Source: Rebecca billardiae RCC1528 (taxonomy: Eukaryota; Protista; Haptophyta). From it: a stretch of 64,000 bases of DNA. The notes under the pieces are model-generated. The model worked only from the letters and a program-made list of their open reading frames with translations, ran no database searches and was not told the origin of the DNA. Of this stretch, positions 42,400-63,175 are shown in pieces (position 1 is the stretch's first letter; every line of letters begins with the position of its first letter). The DNA is taken from assembly GCA_965240325.2 (NCBI GenBank), contig OZ251222.1:4030001-4094000 (forward strand), read 5' to 3'. A program made the translations under genes and the position numbers.

Positions 42400-42433
<34 letters not shown>
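42400..42433 (+). repeat. (GCA)n trinucleotide repeat in the presumed 5' UTR of the giant gene
   Basis: About 11 GCA units, ~60 bp upstream of ATG 42496. Confidence 0.9.
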
Positions 42434-42435
<2 letters not shown>

Positions 42436-42495: not shown

Positions 42496-45400
42496 ATGGC
42501 TGCTGCCCATTCGCGCGTCGGGCTGCTCGCTCGCGGCGTCGGCCTGGCGCTGCTGGCGCTCGCGCTGGGCCGCCCCGCGTCGGTTGCCGTGACCGCCCAG
42601 TCGCCGCCGCCGCCGCGCCCGCCGCCGAGCCCGCCGCCGAGCCCGCCACCCAGCCCGCCGCCGTCACCACCGCCGAGCCCGCCGCCAAGCCCGCCGCCAC
42701 CCTCGCCGCCGCCGAGCCCGCCTCCGTCGCCACCGCCGTCGCCACCGCCGTCGCCACCGCCGAGCCCTCCACCGAGCCCTCCGCCATCACCGCCGCCCAG
42801 CCCGCCGCCGAGCCCGCCGCCGCCCAGCCCTCCGCCCAGCCCTCCACCGAGCCCGCCACCATCGCCGCCGCCTTCTCCGCCGCCAAGCCCGCCGCCGAGC
42901 CCGCCACCGAGCCCGCCGCCGAGCCCTCCGCCCTCGCCGCCCCCGAGCCCACCGCCGAGCCCACCACCAAGCCCGCCACCCTCGCCGCCGCCAAGCCCAC
43001 CGCCGTCGCCGCCGCCGTCGCCACCACCGCCTTCGCCGCCACCGAGCCCGCCGCCGAGCCCGCCGCCCTCGCCCCCCCCGAGCCCACCGCCAAGCCCACC
43101 ACCAAGCCCTCCGCCGTCGCCGCCGCCGAGCCCTCCGCCGTCGCCGCCGCCGTCGCCACCACCGCCGTCGCCGCCACCGAGCCCGCCGCCGAACCCGCCG
43201 CCGAGCCCACCGCCTTCGCCGCCGCCAAGCCCACCGCCGAACCCGCCGCCGAGCCCACCGCCTTCGCCGCCACCAAGCCCACCGCCGAGCCCGCCACCCT
43301 CGCCGCCGCCGCCCTCGCCACCGCCCAGCCCGCCGCCCAGCCCGCCGCCCAGCCCGCCGCCGAGCCCGCCGCCGAGCCCCCCACCGTCGCCGCCGCCGAG
43401 CCCGCCGCCGAGCCCGCCGCCGAGCCCACCACCTTCGCCACCGCCGAGCCCGCCGCCCTCGCCCCCGCCCCCGTCGCCACCACCCAGCCCGCCGCCGAGC
43501 CCGCCGCCTTCGCCGCCGCCGTCACCGCCGCCGAGCCCGCCGCCGAGCCCACCGCCAAGCCCACCGCCTTCACCCCCGCCGAGCCCGCCGCCCTCGCCGC
43601 CTCCGTCGCCGCCGCCTCCCTCGCCACCGCCGAGCCCGCCACCGAGCCCGCCACCCTCGCCGCCGCCCAGCCCGCCGCCGTCTCCGCCACCCAGCCCGCC
43701 GCCCAGCCCGCCGCCCAGCCCGCCGCCCTCGCCGCCCCCCAGTCCACCTCCTTCGCCGCCGCCAAGCCCGCCGCCAAGCCCGCCTCCGTCGCCGCCGCCA
43801 TCGCCGCCTCCGCCCTCGCCGCCTCCCAGCCCGCCACCGAGCCCGCCGCCGTCGCCGCCGCCGAGTCCGCCCCCCAGTCCGCCGCCGTCACCGCCTCCGT
43901 CGCCTCCGCCTAGCCCGCCGCCCAGCCCGCCACCATCGCCGCCGCCGTCGCCACCGCCACCGTCACCGCCTCCCAGCCCGCCGCCTTCGCCGCCGCCCTC
44001 GCCGCCGCCGAGCCCGCCGCCCTCACCGCCGCCCAGCCCGCCACCCTCTCCGCCGCCGAGCCCGCCGCCGTCCCCGCCGCCGTCCCCGCCCCCGTCGCCT
44101 CCACCCTCTCCACCGCCCAGCCCACCGCCCAGCCCGCCGCCGTCGCCCCCGCCTCCGTCACCGCCACCGAGCCCGCCGCCCTCGCCGCCGCCCTCGCCGC
44201 CGCCCTCGCCACCGCCGAGCCCGCCGCCGAGCCCGCCGCCGAGCCCGCCGCCGAGCCCACCGCCATCGCCACCGCCGAGCCCGCCCCCTTCGCCGCCGCC
44301 GCCCTCGCCGCCACCAAGCCCGCCGCCGAGCCCGCCGCCCTCGCCGCCACCAAGCCCGCCGCCGAGCCCACCGCCAAGCCCACCGCCGAGCCCGCCGCCC
44401 TCGCCACCGCCAAGCCCGCCGCCCTCGCCACCGCCCTCGCCGCCACCGCCCTCGCCGCCGCCGAGCCCGCCGCCGAGCCCGCCGCCGAGCCCACCTCCCT
44501 CGCCACCCCCGAGCCCGCCGCCGAGCCCGCCGCCCAGCCCGCCGCCCTCGCCGCCACCAAGCCCGCCGCCGAGCCCGCCGCCAAGCCCGCCGCCGCCCTC
44601 GCCGCCGCCCAGCCCGCCGCCCAGCCCGCCGCCGAGCCCGCCGCCAAGCCCACCACCGTCGCCTCCGCCAAGCCCGCCACCCTCGCCTCCGCCACCCTCG
44701 CCACCACCCAGCCCGCCGCCGAGCCCACCGCCTTCGCCGCCGCCGTCGCCGCCGCCGTCACCGCCGCCGAGCCCTCCTCCAAGCCCGCCCCCGAGCCCGC
44801 CGCCTTCACCACCGCCGAGCCCACCGCCATCGCCGCCGCCGTCGCCCCCGCCGAGCCCGCCTCCCTCACCGCCACCGTCGCCCCCGCCACCATCGCCACC
44901 TCCGAGCCCGCCGCCGAGCCCGCCGCCGTCGCCGCCGCCAAGCCCGCCGCCGAGTCCACCGCCGAGTCCGCCGCCGTCACCGCCACCGAGCCCGCCGCCG
45001 AGCCCGCCGCCGAGCCCGCCGCCCTCGCCGCCACCTCCGTCCCCGCCTCCTAGCCCGCCGCCCTCGCCGCCGCCCTCGCCGCCGCCGAGCCCGCCGCCCT
45101 CACCGCCGCCCTCGCCGCCACCCTCTCCGCCGCCGAGCCCGCCGCCGTCCCCGCCGCCCTCGCCGCCACCCTCTCCGCCGCCCAGCCCACCGCCCAGCCC
45201 ACCACCGTCCCCGCCCCCGTCGCCTCCACCCTCTCCGCCGCCCAGCCCACCGCCCAGCCCGCCGCCCTCGCCCCCGCCACCGTCGCCGCCACCGAGCCCG
45301 CCGCCCTCGCCGCCGCCCTCGCCACCGCCGAGCCCGCCACCAAGCCCACCGCCCTCGCCGCCGCCCTCGCCACCACCACCGAGCCCGCCGCCGAGCCCGC

Positions 45401-48400
45401 CGCCGAGCCCGCCGCCGAGCCCGCCGCCCTCGCCGCCGCCAAGCCCACCGCCATCGCCACCGCCGAGCCCGCCGCCCTCGCCACCGCCAAGCCCGCCGCC
45501 CTCACCACCACCCTCGCCGCCACCGCCCTCACCGCCTCCGAGCCCGCCGCCGAGCCCGCCGCCCAGCCCACCTCCCTCGCCGCCACCAAGCCCACCGCCG
45601 AGCCCGCCACCATCGCCGCCGCCGCCCTCGCCGCCGCCCAGCCCACCGCCCAGCCCGCCGCCAAGCCCGCCGCCAAGCCCACCACCGTCGCCACCGCCCA
45701 GCCCGCCACCCTCGCCTCCGCCACCTTCGCCACCGCCGAGCCCGCCGCCGAGCCCACCGCCTTCGCCGCCGCCGTCACCGCCGCCGTCACCGCCGCCGAG
45801 CCCTCCGCCAAGCCCGCCCCCCAGCCCGCCGCCATCACCGCCGCCATCACCGCCGCCATCGCCGCCGCCATCGCCCCCGCCGAGTCCGCCTCCCTCACCG
45901 CCACCGTCGCCCCCGCCACCATCGCCACCTCCGAGCCCGCCGCCGAGCCCGCCACCGTCGCCGCCGCCGAGCCCGCCGCCGAGTCCACCGCCGAGCCCGC
46001 CGCCCTCGCCGCCACCGAGCCCGCCGCCGAGCCCGCCACCCTCGCCGCCGCCCTCGCCGCCACCTCCGTCCCCGCCTCCTAGCCCGCCGCCCTCGCCGCC
46101 GCCCTCGCCGCCGCCGAGCCCGCCGCCCTCACCGCCGCCCTCGCCGCCACCCTCTCCGCCGCCCAGCCCGCCGCCGTCCCCGCCGCCCTCGCCGCCACCT
46201 TCTCCGCCGCCGAGCCCGCCGCCCAGCCCACCACCGTCCCCGCCCCCGTCGCCTCCACCCTCTCCGCCGCCCAGCCCGCCGCCCAGCCCGCCGCCATCGC
46301 CCCCGCCACCGTCGCCGCCGCCGAGCCCGCCGCCCTCGCCGCCGCCCTCGCCACCGCCGCCGAGCCCGCCACCAAGCCCGCCGCCGAGCCCGCCGCCGAG
46401 CCCGCCGCCCTCGCCGCCACCAAGCCCACCGCCATCGCCACCGCCAAGCCCGCCGCCCTCGCCGCCGCCAAGCCCGCCGCCCTCGCCACCGCCCTCGCCG
46501 CCACCGCCCTCGCCGCCGCCGAGCCCGCCGCCGAGCCCGCCGCCGAGCCCACCTCCCTCGCCGCCGCCGAGCCCGCCGCCGAGCCCGCCGCCCAGCCCAC
46601 CTCCCTCGCCACCCCCGAGCCCGCCGCCCAGCCCGCCGCCGTCGCCGCCACCCTCGCCGCCACCAAGCCCACCGCCGAGCCCGCCGCCATCGCCGCCGCC
46701 GCCCTCGCCGCCGCCCAGCCCACCGCCCAGCCCGCCGCCGAGCCCACCGCCCAGCCCACCGCCCTCGCCACCGCCGAGCCCACCGCCCAGCCCGCCTCCG
46801 AGCCCCCCTCCCTCACCACCGCCGAGCCCACCGCCTTCGCCTCCGCCGCCCTCGCCACCACCCAGCCCGCCGCCGAGCCCTCCGCCTTCGCCGCCGCCGA
46901 GCCCGCCGCCCTCACCGCCTCCAAGCCCTCCGCCAAGCCCGCCCCCGAGCCCGCCGCCTTCACCGCCGCCGAGCCCACCGCCATCGCCGCCACCGTCGCC
47001 CCCGCCGAGTCCGCCTCCCTCGCCGCCACCGTCGCCCCCGCCGCCATCGCCACCTCCGAGCCCGCCGCCGAGCCCGCCACCGTCGCCGCCGCCGAGCCCG
47101 CCGCCGAGTCCACCGCCGAGCCCGCCGCCGTCACCGCCACCGAGCCCGCCGCCGAGCCCGCCACCCTCGCCGCCGCCCTCGCCGCCACCTCCGTCCCCGC
47201 CTCCTAGCCCGCCGCCCTCGCCGCCGCCCTCGCCGCCGCCGAGCCCGCCGCCCTCACCGCCGCCCTCGCCGCCACCCTCTCCGCCGCCCAGCCCGCCGCC
47301 GTCCCCGCCGCCCTCGCCGCCACCCTCTCCGCCGCCCAGCCCGCCGCCCAGCCCACCGCCGTCCCCGCCCCCGTCGCCTCCACCCTCTCCGCCGCCCAGC
47401 CCGCCGCCCAGCCCGCCGCCATCGCCCCCGCCGCCGTCGCCGCCGCCGAGCCCGCCGCCCTCGCCGCCGCCCTCGCCACCGCCATCGCCACCGCCAAGCC
47501 CACCGCCCTCGCCGCCGCCCTCGCCACCGCCGCCAAGCCCGCCGCCGAGCCCGCCGCCGAGCCCGCCGCCGAGCCCGCCACCGAGCCCGCCGCCCTCGCC
47601 GCCGCCAAGCCCACCGCCCTCGCCACCGCCAAGCCCGCCGCCCTCACCACCACCGAGCCCGCCGCCATCACCGCCGCCATCACCGCCGCCATCGCCGCCG
47701 CCAAGCCCGCCACCAAGCCCCCCCCCGCCGTCGCCGCCTCCGAGCCCGCCGCCGGCGCCGCCGCCAAGCCCGCCACCCTCGCCGCCGCCGTCGCCGCCGC
47801 CCTCGCCGCCGCCGTCGCCGCCGCCGTCGCCGCCGCCAAGCCCACCGCCCAGCCCACCGCCGTCACCTCCGCCCTCGCCGCCGCCGAGCCCGCCGCCAAG
47901 CCCGCCGCCGTCGCCGCCGCCTCCATCGCCGCCGCCGAGCCCGCCACCATCGCCCCCGCCGAGCCCACCCCCTTCACCGCCGCCTTCGCCACCGCCCAGC
48001 CCGCCGCCATCGCCGCCGCCGAGCCCGCCGCCATCACCGCCGCCGAGCCCGCCGCCATCACCGCCGCCATCACCGCCGCCATCGCCGCCGCCAAGCCCAC
48101 CACCAAGCCCCCCGCCGCCGTCGCCGCCTCCGAGCCCGCCGCCAAGCCCGCCGCCAAGCCCGCCACCCTCGCCGCCGCCCTCGCCGCCGCCCTCGCCGCC
48201 GCCCTCGCCGCCGCCCTCGCCGCCTCCGTCACCGCCGCCCAGCCCACCGCCGTCACCCCCGCCCTCGCCGCCGCCCAGCCCGCCGCCCAGCCCGCCCCCG
48301 TCGCCACCGCCTCCATCGCCGCCGCCGAGCCCGCCGCCATCGCCGCCGCCGAGCCCACCCCCTTCACCGCCGCCTTCGCCACCGCCCAGCCCGCCGCCAT

Positions 48401-51400
48401 CGCCGCCGCCGAGCCCGCCGCCGAGCCCGCCGCCGAGCCCGCCGCCATCGCCGCCGCCATTGCCGCCGCCGTCGCCGCCGCCCAGCCCGCCGCCATCGCC
48501 GCCGCCATCACCACCGCCATCGCCGCCGCCAAGCCCACCACCAAGCCCCCCGCCGCCGTCGCCGCCTCCGAGCCCGCCGCCGTCGCCGCCGCCAAGCCCG
48601 CCACCCTCGCCGCCGCCCTCGCCGCCACCCTCGCCGCCGCCCTCGCCGCCGCCCTCGCCGCCTCCGTCACCACCGCCCAGCCCACCGCCGTCACCCCCGC
48701 CCTCTCCGCCGCCCAGCCCGCCGCCCAGCCCGCCCCCGTCGCCACCGCCTCCATCGCCACCACCTTCGCCTCCTCCGAGCCCGCCGCCGAGCCCGCCGCC
48801 AAGCCCGCCGCCAAGTCCTCCGCCGAGCCCGCCGCCGTCGCCGCCGCCGAGCCCGCCGCCAAGCCCGCCACCAACGCCGCCGCCGTCGCCGCCGCCGTCG
48901 CCGCCGCCGAGCCCGCCCCCAAGCCCGCCGCCAAGCCCGCCGCCCAGCCCGCCGCCCAGCCCGCCACCCAGCCCGCCACCCAGCCCACCACCTTCGCCTC
49001 CTCCGAGCCCGCCGCCGACCCCGCCGCCTTCGCCGCCGCCTTCGCCGCCACCCAGCCCGCCCCCCTCGCCGCCGCCGAGCCCGCCGCCGAGCCCGCCGCC
49101 CTCGCCGCCACCGAGCCCTCCTCCGAGCCCGCCGCCCTCTCCGCCGCCCTCGCCACCACCAAGCCCGCCGCCCAGCCCGCCTCCGTCGCCACCGCCTCCA
49201 TCGCCACCGCCAAGTCCACCGCCGTCGCCGCCGCCCAGCCCACCGCCTTCACCACCGCCTTCGCCACCGCCCAGCCCGCCGCCATCGCCACCGCCATCGC
49301 CACCGCCGTCGCCGCCACCCAGCCCGCCGCCATCGCCGCCGCCCAGCCCGCCGCCCAGCCCGCCGCCAAGCCCGCCACCCAGCCCACCACCTTCGCCTCC
49401 TCCGAGCCCGCCGCCGAGCCCGCCACCGAGCCCGCCGCCAAGCCCGCCGCCGAGTCCACCGCCCTCGCCACCGCCGAGCCCACCGCCGAGCCCGCCGCCA
49501 TCACCGCCACCATCGCCGCCGCCGTCGCCGCCACCGAGCCCGCCGCCCAGCCCGCCGCCCAGCCCGCCGCCCAGCCCGCCGCCCAGCCCGCCGCCCAGCC
49601 CGCCACCCAGCCCACCGCCTTCGCCTCCTCCGAGCCCGCCGCCGTCGCCGCCGCCGAGCCCACCGCCGAGCCCGCCGCCAAGCCCGCCGCCAAGTCCACC
49701 GCCCTCGCCGCCGCCGAGCCCGCCACCGAGCCCGCCGCCGTCGCCGCCGCCGTCGCCGCCGCCGTCGCCGCCGCCGTCGCCGCCGCCAAGCCCGCCGCCA
49801 AGCCCGCCGCCGAGCCCGCCGCCTTCGCCGCCCCCATCGCCGCCACCCAGCCCGCCGCCCTCGCCGCCGCCGAGCCCGCCGCCGAGCCCGCCACCCTCGC
49901 CGCCACCGAGCCCTCCTCCGAGCCCACCGCCCTCGCCGCCGCCCTCGCCACCACCAAGCCCGCCGCCGAGCCCGCCGCCGAGCCCGCCGCCGAGCCCGCC
50001 GCCAAGCCCACCGCCCTCGCCGCCGCCCTCGCCGCCGCCCTCGCCACCGCCGAGCCCGCCGCCCTCGCCGCCACCCTCGCCACCGCCGAGCCCGCCGCCC
50101 TCGCCGCCGCCGAGCCCGCCGCCCTCGCCACCGCCCTCGCCGCCACCGTCCCCACCGCCCTCGCCACCGCCATCTCCGCCGCCGTCCCCACCGCCATCGC
50201 CACCGCCGAGCCCCCCGCCCTCGCCTCCTCCGAGCCCACCGCCGAGCCCGCCACCCTCGCCACCGCCGAGCCCTCCGCCGAGCCCGCCGCCCTCGCCGCC
50301 ACCCTCGCCACCACCGAGCCCGCCACCCTCGCCGCCGCCAAGCCCGCCGCCCTCGCCACCGCCCTCGCCGCCACCGTCCCCACCGCCCTCGCCACCGCCA
50401 TCTCCGCCGCCGTCCCCACCGCCATCGCCACCGCCGAGCCCCCCGCCCTCGCCTCCTCCGAGCCCACCGCCGAGCCCGCCACCCTCGCCACCGCCGAGCC
50501 CGCCGCCCTCGCCGCCGCCCTCGCCGCCGCCATCGCCGCCGCCATCGCCACCGCCGAGCCCTCCGCCAAGCCCGCCGCCGAGCCCGCCGCCCTCGCCGCC
50601 GCCCTCGCCGCCGCCCTCGCCTCCGCCGAGCCCGCCGCCCTCGCCCCCGCCGAGCCCGCCGCCGAGCCCGCCACCCTCACCGCCGCCCTCGCCGCCGCCA
50701 AGCCCGCCGCCGAGCCCGCCGCCGAGCCCGCCGCCAAGCCCACCGCCGAGCCCACCGCCGTCGCCGCCGCCGAGCCCGCCGCCCTCGCCGCCGCCAAGCC
50801 CGCCGCCCTCGCCGCCCCCATCGCCTCCGCCGAGCCCGCCGCCCTCACCGCCACCGAGCCCGCCGCCCTCGCCACCGCCGAGCCCGCCGCCGAGCCCGCC
50901 GCCGAGCCCTCCGCCGTCGCCGCCGCCATCACCGCCGCCCTCGCCGCCGCCGAGCCCGCCGCCGAGCCCACCGCCGAGCCCGCCGCCGTCGCCGCCACCG
51001 TCGCCGCCACCGAGCCCGCCGCCGTCGCCGCCACCAAGCCCGCCGCCGAGCCCGCCGCCCTCGCCACCGCCGAGCCCGCCACCGAGTCCGCCGCCATCGC
51101 CGCCGCCATCGCCGCCGCCGAGCCCGCCGCCAAGCCCACCGCCAAGCCCGCCGCCATCGCCACCTCCGTCACCGCCGCCGAGCCCGCCGCCGTCTCCGCC
51201 GCCGAGCCCGCCACCCTCGCCGCCACCCTCGCCACCGCCGAGCCCGCCGCCCTCACCGCCGCCCAGCCCGCCGCCGAGCCCGCCGCCACCTTCGCCGCCA
51301 CCCAGCCCGCCACCGAGCCCACCGCCGAGCCCGCCGCCATCGCCGCCCCCAAGCCCGCCGCCAGCGCCGCCGCCCAGCCCTCCTCCATCGCCGCCACCCA

Positions 51401-54400
51401 GCCCGCCGCCAGCCCCGCCACCCAGCCCACCGCCGAGCCCGCCGCCCAGCCCGCCGCCGGCCCCGCCGCCCAGCCCGCCACCCAGCCCGCCGCCGAGCCC
51501 GCCACCCAACCCACCGCCGTCGCCGCCGCCGAGCCCGCCGCCCGGCCCACCACCATCGCCGCCGCCCAGCCCGCCGCCCAGCCCGCCGCCGTCGCCGCCG
51601 CCCTCACCGCCACCCTCGCCCCCGCCGAGTCCACCGCCCTCGCCACCGCCGAGCCCGCCGCCCTCGCCGCCCCCGAGCCCGCCACCCTCGCCGCCGCCAA
51701 GCCCGCCGCCAAGCCCGCCGCCGAGCCCGCCGCCGAGCCCGCCGCCGAGCCCGCCGCCGAGCCCGCCGCCCTCGCCGCCGCCCAGCCCGCCGCCGAGCCC
51801 GCCGCCATCGCCACCTCCCAGCCCACCGCCAAGCCCACCGCCCTCGCCTCCCCCAAGCCCACCGCCCTCGCCGCCGCCCAGCCCGCCGCCCAGCCCGCCA
51901 CCGAGCCCTCCGCCCAGCCCGCCGCCGAGTCCGCCGCCCAGCCCGCCGCCTTCGCCTCCGCCGAGCCCGCCGCCGCCCCCGCCGCCCAGCCCGCCACCGA
52001 GCCCGCCGCCCTCGCCGCCGCCGTCACTGCCGCCCTCGCCGCCGCCCACGCCGCCGCCGAGCCCGCCTCCGCCGTCGCCCCCGCCGTCGCCTCCGAGCCC
52101 GCCTCCGGCGCCACCACCCACGCCGCCACCGTCACCACCGCCGTCGGCGCCACCGTCGCCGCCGCCGTATCCGCCGCCATCGCCGCCGCCGCCATCGCCC
52201 CCGCCGACTCCGCCACCATCGCCGCCACCGCCGTCCCCGCCGCCGTCCCCGCCGCCCAGCCCGCCGCCGCCGAGCTCGCCGCCGCCGCCGCCGCGCGTCG
52301 TGCCCTACCCTCCGCCGCCGCCGTCGCCGCCGCCGAGCCCGCCGCCGTCGCCGCCGCCCAGCCCGCCGCCGTCGCCGCCGCCGAGCCCTCCACCCACGCC
52401 GCCGCCCAGCCCGCCGCCCAGCCCTCCACCGCCCTCGTCGCCGCCATCGTCGCCGCCCTCGCCGCCCTCGTCGCCACCACCGCCGCCGCCCTCGCCGCCG
52501 CCGCCCAGTCCGTTCCCGCCGCCGCTGCCGCCGCCGCCACCGCTGCCGCCCAGCCCGCCGCCGCCACCGAGCCCGCCGCCGCCCAGCCCGCAGCCGCCAC
52601 CGAGCTCGCCGCCGCCGAGCCCGCCCTCGCCGCCGCCGCCCTCGTCGCCGCCGCGCCCGCCGCCGCCCTCGCCACCGCCGCCGCCGCCGCCGAGCCCGCC
52701 GCCGCGCACGACCGAGTTCGTCGTCGCCGTCGTCGGCACGCCGGAGACGATCGACCTCGCGGTCGCCGCCGCGGCGGGCGGGCTGCCCGCGGCCGGCGAC
52801 ACGATCTTCCTCGCCACGGCCTCGTGCGACGGCGCGAGCGCGGACGCGGCGCTCGGCGGCGAGTTCACCGCCGCCGAGCAGGACGGCACGAGCGTGGCCG
52901 TGGTGACGATGCCGAGCGCCATCACACGGCTGCGCTTCTGCCACGCGCCCGCGGGCGGCGGCGCGGTCGTCGAGCTGCCCAACGCCGAGCTCGACGTGTA
53001 CGGCATCGACGCGGCCGCGCTGGTCGCCGTGCGCGCCGTCGCGTCGGAGCAGCAGCTCGTCGGCACCGGCGTCAACTCGAACGAGAACCTCGCCGACCAG
53101 GCCGCGTGGCTGGCGGCGGGCACGGCGGCCGCGGCGTGCGCCGGCCTGAGCGGCAGCGCGCTCGCGACGTGCGTGGACACAGAGTGCGCGTCTGCCGCCG
53201 GCGCGGGCGCGCCGCAGGCGGCGGTTGGCTCGGGCGGCCGCGCCACCTTCACCTTCGCCGCCGCCGGCTCCTTCGAGCTGTGCTTCAAGTTTGGCGACAC
53301 GGCCGGCCGGCCGTGGTCGCTGTTTGCGGACACGCTCGTCGAGTCGAGGGGCGTCGACTCGATGGCCGACCCCGGCGCGGCGGACACGAGCGCGGTGGTG
53401 GGCTCGAGCCTGCTGCTCGAGTTCAGCGGCGCGGGCGTCGCGCAGGGCGACCGCGCCTACCTGCTGCCGGCCAACCTCACCGCGTGCCCGCGCGCCGCGG
53501 CGTACGCGCTCGAGTACGGCGATGCGTACGGCGGCGTGCAGCCGCTCGACGCCGGCCTGCAGGCCGCCTTCGCCTTCGCGCAGCCCGAGGCGAGCCTGCA
53601 GCTGTGCTACGGCTTCGGCGGGTACGACGGCGGCGCGTTTGTGCCGTACCCCGCGCTCACCGCGTCCGCGCTCGCCGTGCTCTCGCCTGCGCGCACCGTG
53701 GGCGTGGTGGGCGTGGCGGAGGCGGTGACCTTCAGCGGCGTGGGCGTGGGCGCGGGCGACAGCGCCTTCTGGACGGTCGAGGCGGACTGCTCGGCCGGCG
53801 CGCTGCCCAGCCTCGGCGGCGAGCAGGCGGTGGACGCCAGCGGCAGCGCGTCCTTCACGTTCACGAACACCACCGCCGCCGGCCTCGCCAGCCTGTGCTA
53901 CCAGTTCGCCACGGAGGGCGCGCACGTGCACGTGCCCGCCGTGCAGTACGACGCGTTCGCCCTCGACGAGCAGGCGCTCGTCGTCGTCAAGGGCGTGGCC
54001 GAGCCGCTGCCGCTGAGCGGGTACGGCGTGGCCGACGGCGACCTCGCCTTCTTTGCCGACGCGTCCGCCGGCGCGCCCGACTGCGCGTCACTCACGCCCG
54101 ACCCGGCGCTCGGCGGCGAGCTGACAGTGGCCGACGGCGCCATCTCCCTCGTTACGAGCGCGGGCATCGTCGCCGCCGAGCTGTGCTTTAAGTTTGGCGC
54201 CGAGCCGTACGTGCACTACCCGGGCGCGCAGCTGTCGTCGTACGAGGTGACGGGCCCGAGCGCGGCCGTGTTTGCGGTCGTCGGCCTCGAGGAGAGCGTC
54301 GCGTTCAGCGGCGTCGGCGTGAAGGCGGGCGACCAGGCCAAGTGGGTGAACACGTCGCTCGGCTGCGACGCGCCGCCCTCGGGCCACGCCGGCACGCTCC

Positions 54401-57400
54401 TCTCCGACCCGAGCGTGCGCACCGCCGCGTACCAGACGGTGCGCGCGGGCGGCGTGACGCCGTTCAGCTTCTTCGACGGCCTCGCCGAGCTGCACCTGTG
54501 CTACCGCTTCAGCCGGCCGGACGGCGGCTTCGAGCCGTGGGTGCTCGTGCCGGAGGTGACGGCGAGCGCGGCGCAGGTGTCCGCGCCCGCGCTCAGCTCC
54601 GCCACGGCCGGCGTGCCCACGACGATCACGCTGCGCGGCATCGGGCTCTCGGCCGCGGACCAGGAGGCGTTCTACGCCGCCGACTGCTCGGTCGGCGCGG
54701 CCGCGTCCTTCAGCGGCCTGCTCGTGCCCGCCTTCCTCGGCGACGGCGCCGCGAGCGTCACGTTCACGCCGCCCACGTACTCGAGCGCCGCGCTCTCGCT
54801 CTGCTACAACTTCCGCGCCAAGGGCGTCGCCGCCTTCGCCGCGGTCTCGCTGGAGGTGTTCGAGCTGCTCGCCTTCTCGGACGCGGACATCCCGGACGCG
54901 CTGCGCCTGGGCGGCGTCGGCGCGCCCACCAGCGGCGCCATCATCGTCAGCGCCCCGCGCACCTTCTGGTTTGGCGGCGTGGGCGTCTCCGACGCCGACC
55001 GCGCCTTCTTGGTGCCGCCGGGCGCGACGAGCTGCGCGTGCACGGCGCCGGGCTGCCGGCCGTGGCAGCAGCAGACGGGCGGGTTGCAGAGTGTCGGCAC
55101 CACACGGCTCGGCGACGCGACCGCGACGTTCACCTTCCTCGCCGACAACGGCGGCGTGGGCTACCAGCTGTGCTACTCGTTCGCGGGCAACGCGTTCAAG
55201 CTGTACCCTGCCTTCACGCTCGACGTGTACGAGGTGACGGCGCCCACCGTGCGGATCGCCGCCACCTCGACCGTCGCGACGTTCGCCGAGGTGATCCAGT
55301 TCGAGGGCGTGGGCGTGGGCGCGGGCGACCTCGCGCTGTGGGTGCTGCTCAGCGGCGACACCGCGTCGGGCGCGCAGGTCGCGACGGACTGCGCCTCCGC
55401 CGCCGCCGCCGGGTACGAGTACGTCGCGCCCGTGCAGTCGGTGAGCGCCAACGGCACGATCGGCCCGACCGAGTACACGCGCGAGGTCTCGGGCGCGGTG
55501 CTGTGCTACAAGTTCGTCGGCTTCGAGTGGCACCTCTTCGCCACGTCGACGCTCTCGGTCACGCTCTCGCGCAACCCGTTCGCGCTCGCGGAGATCGGCT
55601 CGATCGAGCCGGTCGGCGCCGCGCTCGGCTCGTCGACGGAGGTGACCATCTTTGGCTCGGGCTTTGCGGCAGCCGAGGGCGACCCGTTCGACCGCGCGCT
55701 CGGCTGGTTCAACGCGCGCGGCGCGGGCTCGCTCGTCTGCGTGTTCGGCGGGAACAAGGGCGAGCGCTCGTCCGTCACCGCGGTCGCGAGCGACCACATC
55801 ATCTGCCCCGCGCCGGCCGCGTACGCCGTCGCGCGCGAGGTGTTCCTCGAGCTCGAGGCGGCGCGGTGCACGGCGGACGAGCTGGCTGAGGGTGTGTGCT
55901 GCACGGCCGCCGAGCTCGAGCGCGACTCGGCGTGCGAGAAGCGCATCGCGGTGAGCTCGGGCTTCACGTTCTACGAGCTCTCCGCCGTGCGCGCGCTGCG
56001 CCTCCTCCCGCCGGGCTCGCCGCAGGGCCTGCTCCCCGCGGACAACCTCCTCACCGTCGCCGGGTACGAGGAGGGCGCGGCCGAGGTCGACGCGTACGTC
56101 GACCTCGGCCGGCTCACCGTGCGCTACGTGCGCGACGGCTCCGTGCTCGCCGAGCTGCCCGGCTCGCTGCCGGACAAGGGGCTCGCCGAGATGGTCGCGG
56201 GCGTGCCGTACGCCTCGCCCACCGGCGTGGGCACCTTGTTCAACCTCACCGTCGACGTGTCGCTCGACGGCGCCTCCTTCTCGTCGGACGGGCCGCAGTT
56301 CGTGCTGTACAACGCGGTCGTCGAGGCCGGCTTCCCGGCGGGCGCGCCGATCGGCGCGCCCACGGCGCTCACGCTGCTCGGCGGCGGCTTCGTCGACCTG
56401 GACGGCGCGGCGGTGTGCGTCTACACCGACGCGTCCGGCGCGGAGGCGCTCGCGCCCGCCACCATCCTCGCCACCACCACCGCCGTGTGCGCCGCGCCGA
56501 GCGCCGTGCGCGCGGGGTCGTACGCGGTCCGGCTCTCGCTCAACGGCGGGTACAACGTCGAGCCCGTCGTCTTCGACGAGATCGGCTTCGAGCTGTACGA
56601 CCTCGCCAGCGTGAACGTGACGGCCGTCGAGCCGCCGGGCGGCCCGACGACCGGCGGCACGCTCGTCACGCTCTCGGGCTCCGGCTTCGCCGCGTACGGC
56701 GACAACCAGACCGCGTGCGTGATTGACTTTGGCGGCGGCGACGTGCAGCTCGCGGCCGCGCGGCTGCTGGAGGAGCCGCCGCGGCTGCTGTGCGAGATGC
56801 CCGCGTTCACGGGCGGCGGGCGGCGGCTGGCGGGCGAGCACCTGCGCAACGCGACGATCAGCGCCACGCTCAACGGCGGCGCCGACGGCTCGATCGCGCC
56901 CGGCGGCGTCCCCTTCTACTTCTACGACCAGCCGAGCGTCGAGGGCGTGACGCCCGACACGCTCGACGCGGAGGGCGGCGCGGCCGTGCGCGTCACGGGC
57001 TCGGGCTTCCGCGCGCTCGCCGACATCGACGCGGCGTTCGAGGCGTACGTGCGCGTGCGCTTTGGCGAGCAGGTCACGAGCGGCACGGCCTCGGACGACG
57101 CCGAGCTGGGCGTGACCTCGCCCGTCGGGCTGGGCGCCACGCCGATCGAGGTGTCGCTCAACGGGCAGCAGTACGCGCCTCAGGCCGCGTCCGCCACCTT
57201 CTCCGGCTCGTACGCGCCCGTGATCAACCGCGTGGTGTTCGACGACACGGCGACGAAGCTGCTCGTGATCTTCGACGCGCAGGGCACGAACCGCGCCAAC
57301 CAGCTCGGCACGTTCGCCTGCGCCAACGTGCTCACCGCCGCGTCGGTCGCGACGCTGCGCGGCAGCTCGGCGAGCGCGCCCACCTGCAACTGGCAGGACT

Positions 57401-60400
57401 CGCGCACGCTCGTCGCGTTCCTCTCGGCGAGCACCGCCGCCGGGCCGGGCAGCACGATCAGCGTGCGGCCGAACACGATCGCCGCGCCGACGGTCGGCGG
57501 CGTCGCCTCGACCAAGTTCTCCACCGCCTCCGGCACCGTCGACCGCGACTTCCCGTGCCTCACGACGTGCCCGGTGCCGACGATGGCGCTGTCGGGCAGC
57601 GCGCAGCTCTCTGCGTGCGACGGCGACTCGCTCACCGTCGACGCGTCCGCCTCGTCGGGCGGCGGCATCGTGCCGCTCGCCTTCGAGTGGGGCGTCGACG
57701 CGTCGGTCACCGACTTCTCCGCCACGCTCAGCGCCGCGCTCAAGCGGCCGGCCGGCACGCCCAACGCGGTGCTGAGCGCGCAGAGGGACGTGCTCACGCT
57801 CTCCAACGACATTGTGCCCGCGGACGCGCGCACGATGACCTTCCTCGTGCGCGCGCGCTCGTTCACAGGCAGCGCCTCGCCGATCTCGCGCTGGACGGTG
57901 GCCAAGGTGGGCAAGGCGGCGCCGTCGGTGCAGATCCTCGCGCCCGCCACGCTCGACGCGCGCGCGTCGCAGCCCACCGGCCTCCTCGCGCGCGGCCAGG
58001 CGGCCGCGTGCTGGAGGGGCTCCAAGGCGCTGCTCTACACGTGGACGCACGACCGCACGGTGGCGGGCGCGCCCGCCACGCCCGCCGCGCTCGCCACCGC
58101 GCTCGGCTCCACCGCCGGCTCGTCGCTGCTCATCCCGGCGAACACGTTCGTCTTCGGCCGCACCTACCGGCTGCGCGTGCGCGTCGCGATGGCGGCGGAC
58201 CCGACCTTCTCTGCGGAGGCGAGCGTGGACGTGCGCGTGCTCACGGAGCCGCTGCAGGTGTTCTTCGCGCAGGGCGAGCGCTCGGCGTCGGCGGACGAGC
58301 CGCTCGTCCTCGACGCGTCGGGCTCGAACGACCCGGCCGACGCGCTCTCGGCGCTCGGCTCGATCGCCTTCGCCTTCTCGTCCGCGCAGGCGGCCATCGA
58401 TCCGGCGTGGGTGAGCGGCGGCGTGCTCACCGTGCCGGCCAACGCGCTCGCGCCGGGCGAGTACACGTTCACGGTCACGGGCACCAAGGGCGCGCGCTCC
58501 GCGTCGGCGTCGGTCGGCGTCACGGTCCAGGCGGGCGAGCTCTTCGACGTCACGGTCGACCTGAAGCGCGCCAAGGTGCCGGCGAACGGCCAGCTCGTGC
58601 TCGAGGGAGGCGCGTCGTGGGCAGACCGGCGGCGCGACCGCTTCAGCTATCTGTGGAGCTGCGACGAGATCGACCTCGACAAGGCGGGCGCGGTGCGAGG
58701 CACGGGGCGCACGCGGGCGAGCATCGTGATCGACCCGTCGGTGCTCTCGCCCGGCCAGACGTACACCTTCCGCCTCGACGCGACCTCGAGCGGCGCGGCG
58801 GGCATCTCGAGCTTTGCCGTCGTGAGTGCGACGACCAACGTTGCGCCGTGGGGCGGCTCGATCGTCGCCTCGCCCGAGGTGGGGCAGGCGATCTTCACCG
58901 AGTTCTTCCTCGCGGCGCGCGGCTGGACGGACGACCCGGAGGACAAGCCGCTGTACTACGAGTTCCGCCGCGACGGCAACCTCCAGCTCACCTCGCGCTC
59001 GCTCGCCAAGTTCGTGCAGGTGTACCTGCCGGCGGGCGTGCACAACGTGAGCCTCTCCGTCTCAGACGTGTACGGCGCCACCTCGACCGTCGAGTGCCCC
59101 GTGGTCGCCAGCGACGCGGAGCTGACGGGCGCGCAGGTGGACGAGGTGAGCGCGCTGATCGACGAGCTGATCTCGCAGGCGGACACGGGCGCCGCGCTGC
59201 AGATCATCTTTGCGCTCATCGACTCGCAGCAGGGCTCGGGCGGCGGCGCGCGCCGCCGGCTGCTCGAGCGAGGCGGCGCCGGCGGCGCGCGCGCGCTGCA
59301 GCAGGCGGGCGACGGCGACACCGCGCTCAAGCAGTCGCTCATCTCGCAGATCTACGAGCTGCAGCAGCTCGCCGCCGTGTCCGAGTCGGAGCAGCTGCAG
59401 CAGCTGCAGACGCTCAGCGCCACGCTCGCCACCTCCTCCGACGTCGAGCCCGAGGCGCAGAACATCGCGCTGGACGTGCTCGAGGCGCTCACCGCCTCCA
59501 CGACCGTCGACCTCGGCGCCGACGCGCGCGCCGCGCTCGCCGCGTCGATCGGCTCGCTGCTCGACGCGGCGGAGCTGTACGCGGCGAACGAGAGCGTCGC
59601 CGAGCTCTTCAACGCCACGTCGGCCGACGTCGGCTCGGTGCGCCTCGTGCTCGCGCGGCTGATCGAGTACGTGCAGGACGAGGTGGCGCCCGCGCTGATT
59701 GCAGACGCGGTCGCGGGCGAGGGCTCGCGCCTCTTCGACCTCGCCAAGGTGAAGCTGCTCGTGGAGCGGCGCGTGGCGCTCGAGCTGAACGGCGCGGTGA
59801 TCGACTCGCCGACCGGCAACATCACCGTCACGCTGCCGGGCGACAACCGCGTGCTCAACGCCGCCGGGCTCTCCGAGGCGGCCGGTGTGACCCTCAACCT
59901 CGTCGAGTGGACGAGCAACGTGTACGCGCTCATCGAGCAGTCGGGCGCGCAGCTGCGCACCGCGCCGTTCGCGCTGTACTTCGCGGACGGGGCGAACGCG
60001 CCGCTCGCGCTGGACCTCGCGTCGAACGAGTCCGCCTTCGACGTGACCATCCGCTCGGTGAGCACCGCCCCCACCAAGGACAAGGGCGACCCGTCGTACA
60101 ACTGCAGCGCAGACGAGTCGGGCCGCGCGTGCAACGGCCGCGGCACCTGCTCGGGCGGCGACGCGTGCGCGTGCGAGGCGGGCTGGTACGGCACGGCGTG
60201 CAACCACTGGCTGGGCTGCGCCGTGTGGGACGGCGCGACGCTCTCGTGGGCGCCCACCGACACGACGTACGCGCCGACGCTCGGCAACTACGACGAGTAC
60301 TGGGCGGGCGTGGGCTCGAGCGGCGCGCTGCGGTGCAAGCCCACCAGCCTCGGCGACTTTGCGGGCACGCTGCAGGCGGAGCCGATGCCGCCGCCGCCCG

Positions 60401-62629
60401 CGCCGCCGCCGCCGCCGCCGGGCGCGCCGTCGCCGCCGTCGCCCGCGCCGCGCGCGCCGCCGCCGCCGCTCGAGATCGTCGAGATCGTCACGCTGCCCGT
60501 GATCTCGCAGATCTACACGATCGCGATCGCCGTGGTGGGCGGGCTCAACTTGCTGCTGGTCGGCGCGGCGTGCGCGCGCGAGATGCGCGTGAAGCCCGAG
60601 GCGCGGCGCAGCGCGCTGCTGAAGAAGATGGCGGCGCGCTCGGGCGCGATCGAGCGCGCGCGCTCGCGCAGCCACGGCCGCCTCCCCTTCCACCTGCGTG
60701 CGCGCTTCGCCCTCGAGGACGGGCTGTCTCTGCTCGGGCTGGCGCAGGGCGAGACCGCGCCCGGGCTGCGCACGCCCGAGATTGTGCAGATCGTCTTCAC
60801 GCAGCTCATGTTCCAGCTGTGGCTGCAGGCGTTCCTCTTCGCGGGCGAGGGCGAGCTGGGCGTGCCGCTGCCCGCGCCCGAGTCGCTGCAGGCCGGCCGC
60901 CGCGCGCTGCAGCAGGCGGCGGGCGGCGGCAGCGGCGCCGCCTTTGTCGCGCACGTGGCCATCAGCACGGTGCTGGCCGCGCCCGCGCTGTACGTCACGC
61001 GGCTGCTCTTCGTGCTCGTGCTCGGGCTGGCGTGGGGCGCGACGCCGTTCGGCGTGGCGCGGCGGCTCCTCGTCGCCACCACCGTGTGCCTCTTCCCCGC
61101 CGCCGCGCGCAAGAAGTGGAAGGTCGGGCGCGGCGCGGGCGGCGCGCGGCCGATGCAGACGACACCCGTGCGCGCGGGCGGGGCCAGGGCCGGCGCCGAC
61201 CCTGCCGTCGTCGGCTCCGGCGGCTCGGGCAGCGCGGCGGGCGCGGGCAGCGCGGGCGGCTCGCCGAGCGCGGGCAGGATACCGACCACCATCGCCGACG
61301 TGCTCGCCGAGCAGGACGACGGCACGCAGTACCTCCCCTCCTACGCGCCGCGCCGGCTGCCGCCGCTCGCCGGGCCGGGCGGTGATCTGCGCTCGGGCAT
61401 TCGCGAGCGCATCGCCGTGCCGCGCCTGCTCGACGACGGCGACGGCCGGCCGGCGCCGCCGCCGGGCGAGGGCGGGCCGCGCCGCGCCGCGCTGCCCTGG
61501 TCCGAGGACGCCGACAAGAACGCCACGCGGATGAAGCCGCCGTGGGAGCTCGCGGGCGCGCCCGCCGCGGCGAGCGGCGCGCCGCCGCCGCCGCCGCCCC
61601 GGCCGCCGCCCGCCGCGCCGCCCCCGCGCACCGACTCGTCGGCCGCGCGCTCGGGCGGCGAGGGCGGCGGCTCCGAGCGGCGCGGCAGCGGCGCGGCGTG
61701 CTCGAACCGCGTCGCGCCGACCCGCGCCGTCGCGATCCCGCCGCCGACGCAGCCCCAGCCGGAGGGCGGCGCCGCCGGCCCCGCGGGCTTCCGCGCGCGC
61801 GGCATGGACGGCTCGACGGACGGAGCGCCGCCGCCCTCGCCGAGCCCGCCGAGCCCGCCGCCGTCGCCGCCGTCGGGCGCGGAGCGTGACGAGGACGGGG
61901 CGGAGCGCGTGCACCCCGAGGGCGCGGACGCCACGGCGACGGCGCTCGTGTACCCCGGGGACGCGCGCGAGGGGGAGACGGCGACGACGCGCCCGGCGCC
62001 GCCGCCCGAGGGCGGCCCCTCGCCCTTCCTGCGCGAGGCGACGGTTGCCCGGTACAAGGTGGACGGCGGCGAGAGCTTCGCCTACGGCACCGGCGAGGTG
62101 CCCGAGGCCAAAACGGAGTTCACCGCCGTCGACAAGATTCGGGTACGACGCGCGCGCGCGCGCGCGCGCCGTGGCCGGGCGGGCGGCGTCACGTGCCGCG
62201 CGCGCGCGCCCCGGCGTGGCGGCGCTTGGCGCTCACCCGTGCACGCGCGCCCGCCCGCCCCTCCGCCATGCCCTCCGCAGACGGCCTTGGCCTGGATGCT
62301 GCAGCTTGGGATCTTCGGCATCCTCGCCTACTTTGCGCTGGAGAGCTCGTTCAAGCACACGGAGCCCGTCGCGACTGTCGCGCTCGCAGCGTTTGCGGTG
62401 CGTGCGAGCGCGCCATTGCGCGGAGCGGAGCCAGTGACGCGCGTGAGCGTGAGCGAGGGCGCGCGCGCGGCCGTCCACCGTCGGCTCACAAACGGAACGG
62501 TCGCCTCGCGCCCCGCCACCCACCGCGCAGGTCGCCACCTTCGCGACCTTTGTGGTCGAGGAGCCCATCGTCATCCTGCTCTTCGCAGGCATTTCGCACA
62601 TGGCCGCTGACGTCGCAGGCGGCATATGA
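42496..62629 (+). CDS. Giant (~6,620 aa) polycystin-1-like surface protein: signal peptide - (SPPP)n stalk - 9 beta-rich repeats - ~5 IPT/TIG - PKD/REJ - GAIN/EGF/GPS-like - ~5 TM
   Basis: Exons 42496-62142, 62281-62397, 62531-62629. Signal peptide MAAAHSRVGLLARGVGLALLALALGRPASVA. IPT motifs (VTAVEPPGGPTTGGTLVTLSGSGF). REJ-like motifs (LVLDASGSNDP, FSYLWSC, APWGG...GWTDDPEDKPLYYEF). GPS-like CAVWD...W...CKPTSLGDF. The last exon ends FVVEEPIVILLF. Confidence 0.85.
42601..52704 (+). repeat. Coding tandem repeat, 12/15-nt units encoding Ser-Pro3 / Ser-Pro4 (~10.1 kb, ~3,370 aa)
   Basis: Uninterrupted reading frame; nucleotide variation is almost entirely synonymous (Ser AGC/TCG/TCA/TCT/AGT, Pro CCN). 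Confidence 0.98.
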
Positions 62630-63175
62630 TCCGCGTCGGATCATATGGGACATGCCGCCGGTCGACATCATGTCTTATTCATGACATGCCGCCATCGGAA
62701 GCCAGCACACTATACAGACTATACTCAGCATGTCACTGCGCATGATGTCACGACTGCTTGCTGTCAGTATCGTCATACTGTAACAGTTACAGTAGCAGTA
62801 AGACTTAGTCGCGCGTCAACATGATATGTGTAGTCATGGCGGGGCGGAGTTATATGGCGGGCGGCCGTTAATATTGGAATATATAGTCGCGTAGTAGTGG
62901 TCGGCCATTGATGATGCCACTATAACTCGTCTAAGACTACTGCTAGCCACTGCGGACTACCGATGCTCGATACCCGGCGCCCGCCGCTGGCACTCCGCAC
63001 TGCGCCGCGTCGATCGAGTAGGCTCCAGCTCCGCCGGTCCACCCCCCCGGCCCCAGCTCCGTTACGTCTTGGCCCCGAGCCGAAGTCAATCAACCAAGCG
63101 AACCATGCAGCGCAGAGTCCCTTCCGACCCCCGATTGATGACTTCGTCAACGAGAAATGCCCGATCTGACCGACC

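What the first reader, a model, noticed from the sequence alone, without database searches (positions are those of the whole stretch)
42496..62629. Polycystin-1-like receptor carrying a ~3,370-residue Ser-Pro3 stalk (about 1 micrometre): candidate filament, hair or tether protein
Seen: signal peptide, then 10.1 kb of in-frame (SPPP)n, then beta-sandwich-like repeats, IPT/TIG, REJ, a GPS-like motif and ~5 TM segments. No PLAT or channel domain is visible, and there is a long Pro-rich loop. Established: SP3-4 repeats are extensin/HRGP motifs that are hydroxylated, glycosylated and form polyproline-II rods (~0.31 nm/residue, so ~1 micrometre here). Chlamydomonas mastigonemes use polyhydroxyproline-rich proteins associated with PKD2. 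Inference: this is a membrane-anchored glycofilament or long-range mechanosensory/adhesion antenna, possibly partnering a PKD2-type channel. The rod is distal (N-terminal) to the globular domains, the reverse of a head-on-a-stalk adhesin.
Basis: partly seen in the sequence, partly recalled or inferred. Interest (0 to 1): 0.85.

Follow-up and report, generated by a model that had tools for sequence, protein, structure and literature searches.

The report
Headless micron-long proline-rod membrane protein
A haptophyte alga has an intact gene for a 6,666-residue membrane protein whose outer half is a bare Ser-Pro-Pro-Pro rod about one micrometre long; it is most likely a sugar-coated surface or flagellar hair made from one molecule, but nothing yet shows that it is expressed.

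Summary
A two-exon gene (42496-62397, 62531-62629) encodes 6,666 aa:
- a signal peptide
- a 3,370-aa (SPPP)n tract
- ten uncatalogued ~100-aa repeats
- IPT/TIG domains
- a REJ domain (Pfam 8e-41)
- a helical-then-strand region with an EGF insert and a GPS-like motif
- a conserved multi-helix membrane domain

The rod is under protein-level selection. Its 736 SPPP units use 103 different 12-mers, both serine codon families are interleaved, and no exact repeat reaches 200 nt. A 38%-identical, collinear homologue from another organism also follows an in-frame SP tract.

The GPS cleavage triad is degenerate here (SL-G, not HL-T). Three more conserved helices follow the Pro-rich loop. No PLAT, channel half or other link to PKD2 was found.

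The genome is from a pavlovophyte-related haptophyte. The scan had already found at least a dozen paralogues on other DNA of this genome, two of them headless.

The closest described systems are Chlamydomonas MST3/Mstax and the TLP-4 glycofibril. My best reading is a single-molecule, membrane-anchored glycofibril.

Expression, glycosylation, location and the GAIN and membrane folds are all untested; both AlphaFold models were poor.

The parts
42496..42597 (+). Start codon and predicted signal peptide (aa 1-34, cleavage inferred after VTA)
   Evidence: basic n-region, hydrophobic LALLALAL core (Kyte-Doolittle 1.7), small residues before Q35. The rod starts at aa 36. The upstream in-frame sequence is a (GCA)n, Ala-rich leader.
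42601..49200 (+). Rod part A: (SPPP)n punctuated by SPPPP
   Evidence: 33 of the first 40 gaps between SPPPP units are multiples of four units (8, 12, 16, 20).
49201..51276 (+). Rod part B: uninterrupted run of 173 SPPP units (aa 2236-2927)
   Evidence: The DNA is still codon-diverse.
51277..52710 (+). Rod part C: degenerate membrane-proximal end of the rod (T, A, N, Y, L, F substitutions, SSPP, longer Pro runs)
   Evidence: of the rod's 31 non-S/P residues, 7 lie in its first 2,860 residues and 24 in its last 509.
52711..55530 (+). Ten ~100-aa repeats (consensus ..VVG..E...F.G.GV..GD.A......C....GG......A.FTF.......LCY.F), probably beta-rich, uncatalogued
   Evidence: alignment A4. No Pfam hit, no PDB hit below E 0.2, no named ESM Atlas cluster. 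Conserved repeat for repeat in P0001.
55591..57210 (+). Four to five IPT/TIG domains
   Evidence: Pfam PF01833, E 9.2e-20, four stretches; the first also hits Anth_Ig weakly.
57211..59214 (+). REJ domain (best Pfam stretch 58114-59214)
   Evidence: Pfam PF02010, E 8e-41, 140.5 bits against a cut-off of 25. 1,268 REJ-region relatives in 1.8 billion representatives.
59116..60366 (+). GAIN-like region: about nine predicted helices, then strands, with an EGF insert (60103-60201) and a GPS-like motif (60208-60366) that ends LRCKPTSLGDFAG
   Evidence: Secondary structure (model pLDDT only 43). EGF: Pfam EGF_Teneurin 25.1-26.8 bits (cut-off 24.3) and EGF_2 22.9-24.5 bits (cut-off 22.1). GPS by alignment to P0001 (Pfam GPS 21.1 bits, cut-off 22.5), P0025 (1.5e-9) and P0065 (3e-5). 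The fold is not established.
60367..60474 (+). Pro-rich juxtamembrane linker
   Evidence: present in all homologues.
60475..61110 (+). Membrane block 1: strong TM1, a basic loop with conserved RFALED...GE..PGLR.P, a weakly hydrophobic Q-rich helix, then a 36-50-aa hydrophobic stretch (1-3 helices)
   Evidence: No Pfam or PDB similarity.
61111..62280 (+). 390-aa Pro/Ala/Gly/Arg-rich loop with conserved short motifs (RERIAVP at 61402-61422; PPWEL)
   Evidence: RER[IV]x[VLM]P is present in 4 of 5 homologues, so this is coding sequence, not an intron read through.
62281..62397 (+). Membrane block 2, first part (end of exon 1)
62398..62530 (+). Intron, 133 nt, GT..AG, phase 0
   Evidence: the reading frame changes at the same place in the window and in L001. 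The spliced product matches the C-termini of P0002, P0003 and P0006.
62531..62629 (+). Exon 2: last helix ...VATFATFVVEEPIVILLFAGISHMAADVAGGI plus the stop codon
   Evidence: the C-terminal signature [EI]EP..I......[QS]H.......GG[IV] is shared with P0002, P0003 and P0006.

Best explanation
Shown by computation: this is a real, intact two-exon gene of a pavlovophyte-related haptophyte. It encodes a 6,666-aa (654 kDa before modification) multi-pass membrane protein. A signal peptide sends the N-terminus outside, and the first 3,370 mature residues are a bare (SPPP)n tract with nothing at its tip.

Inferred, as for plant extensins, MST1/MST3 and TLP-4: the prolines are hydroxylated, and Hyp and Ser are O-glycosylated. 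That would give a stiff polyproline-II glycofibril about 1.0 um long.

The rod is carried on a protein stalk (ten novel repeats, 4-5 IPT/TIG, REJ, and a GAIN-like module with an EGF insert). The stalk is fixed in the membrane by a family-specific domain of about 7 (6-8) helices split by a long loop. By the positive-inside rule that loop is probably cytoplasmic. It carries conserved short motifs that could dock it to intracellular partners.

The GPS triad is SL-G, so this copy probably stays one covalent chain from tip to membrane. Most likely function: a single-molecule surface or flagellar hair, one member of a large paralogous family whose other members carry binding heads on the same kind of rod.
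For: Gene integrity and architecture.

Protein-level selection on the rod:
- 103 different 12-mers encode the 736 SPPP units.
- Ser is AGY in 54% and TCN in 46% of units, interleaved along the array.
- Pro codon positions 1 and 2 never vary in those units.
- Only 7 non-S/P residues occur in the first 2,860 rod residues.
- No exact DNA repeat reaches 200 nt.

Conservation across organisms:
- P0001/L001 is collinear over 3,016 aa at 38% identity. Its contig begins inside an in-frame SP tract that ends ...PPPRT just before the same first repeat.
- The intron position and the C-terminal helices are conserved.
- Loop motifs are conserved.

Known precedents: MST3/Mstax is an N-distal Hyp-rich axial chain anchored by a polycystin-type membrane domain (PMC11015965; 10.1101/2024.12.24.630281). 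TLP-4 is a free single-chain tetrapeptide-repeat glycofibril with a rise of 12.4 A per four residues (PMC11725842).

Haptophytes have extensin-type glycosyltransferase homologues (PMC5371791). Earlier unchecked scan notes report P4H, HPAT and GT77 genes in this genome.
Against: There is no expression evidence at all. The only public run holding the sequence has short, low-depth contigs. Hydroxylation, glycosylation and location are inferred from sequence and analogy. The GAIN and membrane-domain folds could not be confirmed: AlphaFold pLDDT was 42-43, Foldseek gave nothing meaningful, and PDB profile searches found only the EGF. The helix number and topology are unresolved. An upstream head-encoding exon cannot be strictly excluded without RNA, although the neighbouring ORFs look like unrelated intracellular genes.
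Confidence: 0.55

Rival explanations
1. Mechanosensory antenna. The rod transmits drag or contact force to the REJ/GAIN base, which gates or recruits a PKD2-type channel, as proposed for PC1-PKD2 and for the MST3-SIP-PKD2 complex.
For: A REJ domain and a GPS-like motif are present. MST3 sets a precedent for a Hyp-rich rod tied to PKD2 (PMC11015965). Earlier unchecked notes report PKD2 genes elsewhere in this genome. Remoter REJ homologues carry C-terminal EF-hands, which hints at Ca2+ signalling in the wider family.
Against: There is no PKD_channel, PLAT or PKD2-like segment by Pfam. The family profile of the membrane domain finds no match among all PDB sequences, which include solved polycystin structures such as the PKD1-PKD2 complex cited in PMC11015965. 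So the element that contacts PKD2 in PC1 and MST3 is not detectable. The GPS triad is degenerate (SL-G), so no cleavage-dependent tethered agonist is expected. This copy has no EF-hand.
Confidence: 0.2
2. Component of a general cell coat (glycocalyx or brush), or an anchor for scales or mucilage, rather than a discrete hair. Many such rods would together form a micrometre-thick hydrated layer for protection, anti-fouling or virus and grazer avoidance.
For: The rod is headless, so it has no obvious ligand-binding tip. Earlier notes report a large paralogous family and other giant SPPP proteins without a REJ base in the same genome. Pavlovophytes bear knob scales (PMC10341766).
Against: An elaborate conserved stalk and multi-helix anchor with conserved loop motifs is more than a coat polymer seems to need. 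There are no data on copy number or location.
Confidence: 0.18
3. Assembly artefact or dead gene. The 10-kb tract would be an assembler's expansion or a non-coding satellite, and the open frame would be a by-product of 85% G+C.
For: In very GC-rich DNA, long open frames arise by chance. All three forward frames of the repeat lack stops, and long ORFs run on the opposite strand. No RNA evidence exists, and no read-level check of repeat length was possible.
Against: The codon-position pattern is that of a translated gene. Two serine codon families that cannot be exchanged by a single synonymous change are interleaved. Every length change is in whole codons. The frame links a signal peptide to Pfam domains 10 kb away. 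K-mers of 60 nt are about 96% unique. A homologue from another organism has the same junction.
Confidence: 0.05

Closest known systems
Chlamydomonas reinhardtii MST3 / Mstax (Cre06.g309951), axial protein of the mastigoneme
   Same: Both are giant proteins (about 8,000-8,572 aa against 6,666 aa). In both, a signal peptide is followed by a Ser-Hyp-rich N-terminus at the distal tip, then a micrometre-scale hydroxyproline-rich extended chain. Both have a C-terminal polycystin-related membrane anchor and a long intracellular part (PMC11015965; 10.1101/2024.12.24.630281).
   Different: MST3's shaft is made of 34-42 complex repeats (P13...P11(XXP)3) that bind an MST1 sheath. Here the rod is plain SPPP with a longest Pro run of 7. 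MST3 has C-type lectins and a partial PKD2-like channel domain completed by SIP. Here there are IPT/TIG, REJ, a GPS-like motif and an unrelated membrane domain. The lineage also differs: a haptophyte rather than a chlorophycean green alga.
TLP-4 glycofibril (CryoSeek II, pond water; gene and organism unknown)
   Same: A single linear polypeptide of tetrapeptide repeats with Ser/Thr next to a modified Pro. It rises 12.4 A per repeat, is held rigid only by its glycan coat and needs no partner protein (PMC11725842). At that rise, the 3,370 rod residues here would span about 1.04 um.
   Different: The TLP-4 sequence is unknown (PT/Sxx or T/SPxx) and carries 3,4-dihydroxyproline. Its paper does not mention a membrane anchor or haptophytes. 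Any link to this protein is conjecture.
Polycystin-1 / PKDREJ / sea-urchin REJ receptors
   Same: A REJ domain is followed by a GPS-type motif just outside the first membrane helix, and Ig-like or IPT-type repeats lie upstream.
   Different: There is no PLAT, no six-helix channel-like half and no detectable sequence similarity in the membrane part. The GPS triad is degenerate. From memory, not tested here: some sea-urchin REJ proteins are also channel-less.
Plant extensins (Ser-Hyp3-5 hydroxyproline-rich glycoproteins)
   Same: The SP3/SP4 motif. The expected chemistry is prolyl 4-hydroxylation, Hyp arabinosylation and Ser galactosylation, giving a polyproline-II rod (PMC5371791; PMC11015965).
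   Different: Extensins are secreted wall proteins a few hundred residues long with Tyr cross-link motifs. This rod is ten times longer, has only 2 Tyr and no Lys, and is membrane-anchored.

Membership tests
Polycystin-1 family (PC1, PKD1L, PKDREJ: 11-TM REJ receptors) | REJ domain | tested here: met
   Pfam PF02010, E 8e-41, 140.5 bits.
Polycystin-1 family (PC1, PKD1L, PKDREJ: 11-TM REJ receptors) | GAIN domain with a cleavable GPS (HL|T/S) next to TM1 | tested here: inconclusive
   The motif aligns with the GPS of homologues (P0025 Pfam GPS 1.5e-9; P0001 21.1 bits against a cut-off of 22.5). The window reads SL-G, has no Pfam GPS hit of its own, and its GAIN fold is not confirmed.
Polycystin-1 family (PC1, PKD1L, PKDREJ: 11-TM REJ receptors) | PLAT domain in the first cytoplasmic loop | tested here: not met
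   No Pfam PLAT at E up to 10. The loop is about 60 aa and carries a different conserved motif, RFALED...GE..PGLR.P.
Polycystin-1 family (PC1, PKD1L, PKDREJ: 11-TM REJ receptors) | C-terminal six-helix PKD/TRPP channel-like half | tested here: not met
   No PF08016 hit. No PDB sequence hit with the single sequence or the family profile. The gene ends at 62629, and the homologue L001 has a TatD gene about 0.8 kb downstream.
MST3/Mstax-type HRGPs with a partial PKD2-like domain (Chlamydomonas) | Very long Hyp-rich extended chain on the N-terminal side of the membrane anchor | tested here: met
   3,370-aa Pro/Ser tract between the signal peptide and the ectodomain. Hydroxylation itself is not testable here.
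MST3/Mstax-type HRGPs with a partial PKD2-like domain (Chlamydomonas) | MST1-binding repeats P13...P11(XXP)3 | tested here: not met
   The longest Pro run is 7, and the units are SPPP or SPPPP.
MST3/Mstax-type HRGPs with a partial PKD2-like domain (Chlamydomonas) | Partial PKD2-like transmembrane/TOP domain completed by SIP | tested here: not met
   No Pfam PKD_channel and no PDB similarity for the membrane profile. A fold-level test failed for lack of a usable model.
Extensins | Ser-Pro3-5 repeats | tested here: met
   736 SPPP and 48-49 SPPPP units.
Extensins | Tyr-based cross-linking motifs (YXY, VYK) in a secreted wall protein | tested here: not met
   Only 2 Tyr and no Lys in the rod, and the protein has membrane helices.
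Adhesion GPCRs (GAIN + secretin-like 7TM) | 7tm_2 domain directly after the GPS | tested here: not met
   No 7tm Pfam hit at E up to 10. A 36-aa Pro-rich linker separates the GPS-like motif from TM1.
TLP-4-type single-chain glycofibrils | Long tetrapeptide repeat with Ser/Thr adjacent to a modified Pro, coated by glycans | not testable with these tools
   The sequence pattern fits (SPxx), but the glycans, the diHyp and the identity of TLP-4 are unknown (PMC11725842).

The most novel reading that the evidence does not exclude
These headless (SPPP)n genes would encode a so far undescribed kind of eukaryotic appendage. Each would be a micrometre-long hair made of one polypeptide held rigid by its glycan coat, like the orphan TLP-4 fibrils seen by cryo-EM in pond water. 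It would be planted in the membrane by a channel-less REJ/GAIN-like base with its own novel multi-helix domain. That would give pavlovophyte flagellar or body hairs, and possibly free environmental glycofibrils, a genetic identity.
Probability: 0.3. Interest if true: 0.8.

Novelty: new variant of a known kind. Interest (0 to 1): 0.6.

Why it matters
If the protein is made as predicted, three things follow.
- It extends the 'hydroxyproline-rich rod on a polycystin-type anchor' design, known only from the Chlamydomonas mastigoneme, to haptophytes. This version is simpler: one chain, no sheath protein, no channel half.
- It offers a candidate gene class for single-chain glycofibrils such as TLP-4, whose genes are unknown.
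- It shows that plant-type extensin chemistry may build micrometre-scale structures outside the green lineage.

There is also a practical point. Such genes are broken or missing in public assemblies and protein sets. The homologous contig L001 stops inside the rod, and the CCMP2436 gene model sits just after a 2.9-kb gap. None of the 150 best REJ relatives carries a long SP tract.

Tried and rejected
- Word-indexed homologue searches. The one on the REJ-to-TM region found nothing. The one on P0003's membrane part found only P0002. The exhaustive HMMER search was needed.
- AlphaFold2 on the membrane domain (P0003:705-1115, five-sequence alignment) gave pLDDT 41.9. On the window's GAIN-like region it gave pLDDT 42.9. 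Both are too poor to use. Foldseek on the second model gave only meaningless helical-repeat hits, so I ran no further fold searches.
- PDB sequence and profile searches found only EGF modules for the GAIN-like profile. They found nothing real for the membrane profile and nothing below E 0.2 for the repeat profile.
- ESM Atlas feature searches on the novel repeats and on the membrane domain returned only unnamed clusters.
- Sequencing runs: a single run holds 6% of the sampled words, as short low-depth contigs 98-99% identical at three places. It gives no information on expression, splicing or repeat length.
- I first thought this might be an MST3/Mstax orthologue. I rejected that because it has no MHR-type repeats, no C-type lectins and no PKD2-like domain.
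- I considered the 390-aa low-complexity stretch after TM block 1 as an intron read through. I rejected that because homologues share RER[IV]x[VLM]P and PPWEL there.
- tblastx between the window's tail and L001 was noisy because of the G+C content. Only the collinear chain around the last two exons was used.

Full report
**Observation.**
The + strand is open from 42157 to 62610. G+C rises to 0.80-0.86 with strong C-over-G skew across 42-52 kb. From the ATG at 42496 the product starts with a signal-peptide-like segment. From residue 36 it runs through 3,370 residues made of 2,532 Pro, 807 Ser and only 31 other residues. Tandem Repeats Finder sees a 12-nt period with about 807 copies but only 71% matches. 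After the tract come about 3,260 residues of ordinary composition.

**Is the rod real coding sequence?**
- In the 736 exact SPPP units, Pro codon positions 1 and 2 never vary, while third positions use all four bases.
- The units are written with 103 different 12-mers.
- Ser is AGY in 54% and TCN in 46% of units, and the two families are interleaved along the whole array. They cannot be exchanged by a single synonymous change.
- Only 7 of the first 2,860 rod residues are not Ser or Pro.
- DNA identity at the 12-nt lag is 73%. No exact repeat reaches 200 nt, and 60-mers are about 96% unique.

This is the signature of long-standing selection on the protein. It is not that of a young satellite or an assembler's expansion. 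All length variation keeps the frame that joins the signal peptide to the Pfam domains 10 kb downstream.

**Gene model.**
Comparison with a homologous contig (L001) shows that both sequences change reading frame at the same point after '...AAFA/AAWG'. Both resume at a conserved last segment that ends in a stop. The spliced protein has 6,666 aa and weighs 654 kDa.

**Domains.**
- Pfam finds REJ (8e-41), IPT/TIG (9e-20, four stretches) and one EGF. It finds no PLAT, PKD_channel, 7tm or lectin.
- Residues 3406-4345 are ten ~100-aa repeats with the signature GxGV..GD.A...C...GG...FTF...LCYxF. No Pfam, PDB or named Atlas family matches them.
- After REJ comes a region predicted as about nine helices followed by strands. 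It carries an EGF insert and ends in C..WD...W....C.....SLGDFAG.
- In homologues the same columns read C.C.HLTDFA and reach or approach the Pfam GPS threshold: P0025 1.5e-9, P0065 3e-5, P0001 21.1 bits against a cut-off of 22.5.
- The window's copy has Ser for His and Gly for Thr. So the motif is homologous to a GPS but probably no longer self-cleaves. P0002 (VL-G) and P0003 (SS-G) are also degenerate, while P0001 is canonical.

**Membrane part.**
- A strongly hydrophobic TM1 is followed by a very basic loop with the conserved RFALED...GE..PGLR.P.
- Next come a weakly hydrophobic Q-rich helix, a variable loop, and a 36-50-aa hydrophobic stretch that could be one to three helices.
- A 390-aa Pro/Ala/Gly/Arg-rich loop follows. 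It shares RER[IV]x[VLM]P with three homologues and PPWEL with one.
- Three further helices end in the family signature [EI]EP..I......[QS]H.......GG[IV].
- The total is therefore about seven (6-8) helices in two blocks, not five. The topology is unresolved, but the positive-inside rule puts the two basic loops in the cytoplasm.
- Neither the single sequence nor the family profile matches any PDB chain.

**Relatives.**
The exhaustive HMMER search found 1,268 proteins with the REJ region, but only four that share the whole REJ-to-C-terminus module.
- P0001 (3,102 aa, a Logan contig of 70% G+C) is collinear with the window's non-rod part over 3,016 aa at 38% identity. Its contig begins inside an in-frame SP-rich tract ending ...SPPPRT, directly before the first repeat. 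The rod-then-stalk junction is therefore conserved, and short-read assembly broke at the rod.
- P0002 and P0003 are metagenome fragments.
- P0006 is KAJ1620141.1 of Pavlovales sp. CCMP2436. Its model starts right after a 2.9-kb run of N.

None of the 150 best REJ relatives contains a long SP tract. Remoter relatives combine TIG, REJ and GPS with C-terminal EF-hands.

**Organism.**
The window's PurF is 66% identical to that of Diacronema lutheri and 63% to that of Pavlovales sp. CCMP2436, its best named matches. The genome is therefore from a pavlovophyte-related haptophyte, but from neither of these two.

**What the scan already had.**
Earlier notes on other DNA of this same genome describe at least a dozen giant genes with an SPPP rod on a REJ/GAIN base. 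Most carry a propeller or LRR head, and two are headless. Other notes report P4H, HPAT and GT77 genes and PKD2 genes. I did not check those notes. This finding is one more family member. Three features are shown here for this member:
- the degenerate GPS
- the second block of three conserved helices after the loop
- the conserved loop motifs

**Mechanism.**
- Shown: the architecture, selection on the rod, and conservation of the junction and the anchor.
- Inferred from established extensin, MST1/MST3 and TLP-4 chemistry: hydroxylation and O-glycosylation would make a stiff polyproline-II glycofibril of about 1.04 um (0.31 nm per residue, or 12.4 A per tetrapeptide; PMC11015965, PMC11725842).
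- With no head and an uncleavable GPS, the simplest reading is a passive, covalently continuous hair or coat filament.
- A sensory role with PKD2 is possible, but the element that contacts PKD2 in PC1 and MST3 is not detectable here.

**Limits.**
- There are no RNA data and no read-level check of repeat length.
- Both structure predictions were poor.
- A literature search found no paper combining haptophytes with REJ or polycystin and hydroxyproline-rich proteins, but that library is incomplete.

Noticed in passing
window 42601-49200: The SPPPP 'punctuation' units are not randomly placed. 33 of the first 40 gaps between them are multiples of four units (8, 12, 16, 20), so blocks are 16n+1 residues long. 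DNA autocorrelation peaks at 48, 147 and 195 nt. Then comes a run of 173 pure SPPP units. It is not known whether this reflects a 48-nt higher-order repeat or a structural phase rule.
   Followed up: partly
window 22934-25771 (-): A 946-aa ORF has a GT31-type Galactosyl_T domain (Pfam PF01762, 7e-16) about 17 kb upstream of the rod gene. From memory, plant GT31 enzymes include Hyp-O-galactosyltransferases. No link to the rod gene was shown.
   Followed up: no
window 42400-42434: A perfect (GCA)11.7 repeat lies in the leader just upstream of the start codon. It would read as poly-Ala if translated from the upstream ATG at 42283.
   Followed up: no
window 30229-33948 (+): A 1,240-aa ORF in the most GC-rich part of the window (0.78-0.81) ends in a RAP domain (Pfam 4.6e-6). 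A nearly full-length ORF lies on the opposite strand.
   Followed up: no
window 38763-42078 (+): The neighbours upstream of the rod gene look intracellular: a weak F-box match at about 40.2-40.4 kb, and an acidic-tract protein with a 'GEWYTARV...HFEGWSDRY' segment. They are not head domains of the rod protein.
   Followed up: partly
L002 7026-9956 (Pavlovales sp. CCMP2436, MU631812.1): A 2.9-kb run of N lies directly upstream of the partial gene model KAJ1620141.1, which holds only the membrane part of the family. The public assembly appears to have lost the ectodomain and any rod.
   Followed up: partly
L001 1-160 and 9416-10520: The homologous contig starts inside the SP tract. Its last two coding segments were called as a separate gene because of the conserved short intron, so automatic gene calls split this family.
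   Followed up: yes
window 62700-64000: G+C drops to about 0.60 and stops appear in all frames right after the gene. Earlier notes place a composite transposon 6 kb beyond the window's end.
   Followed up: no
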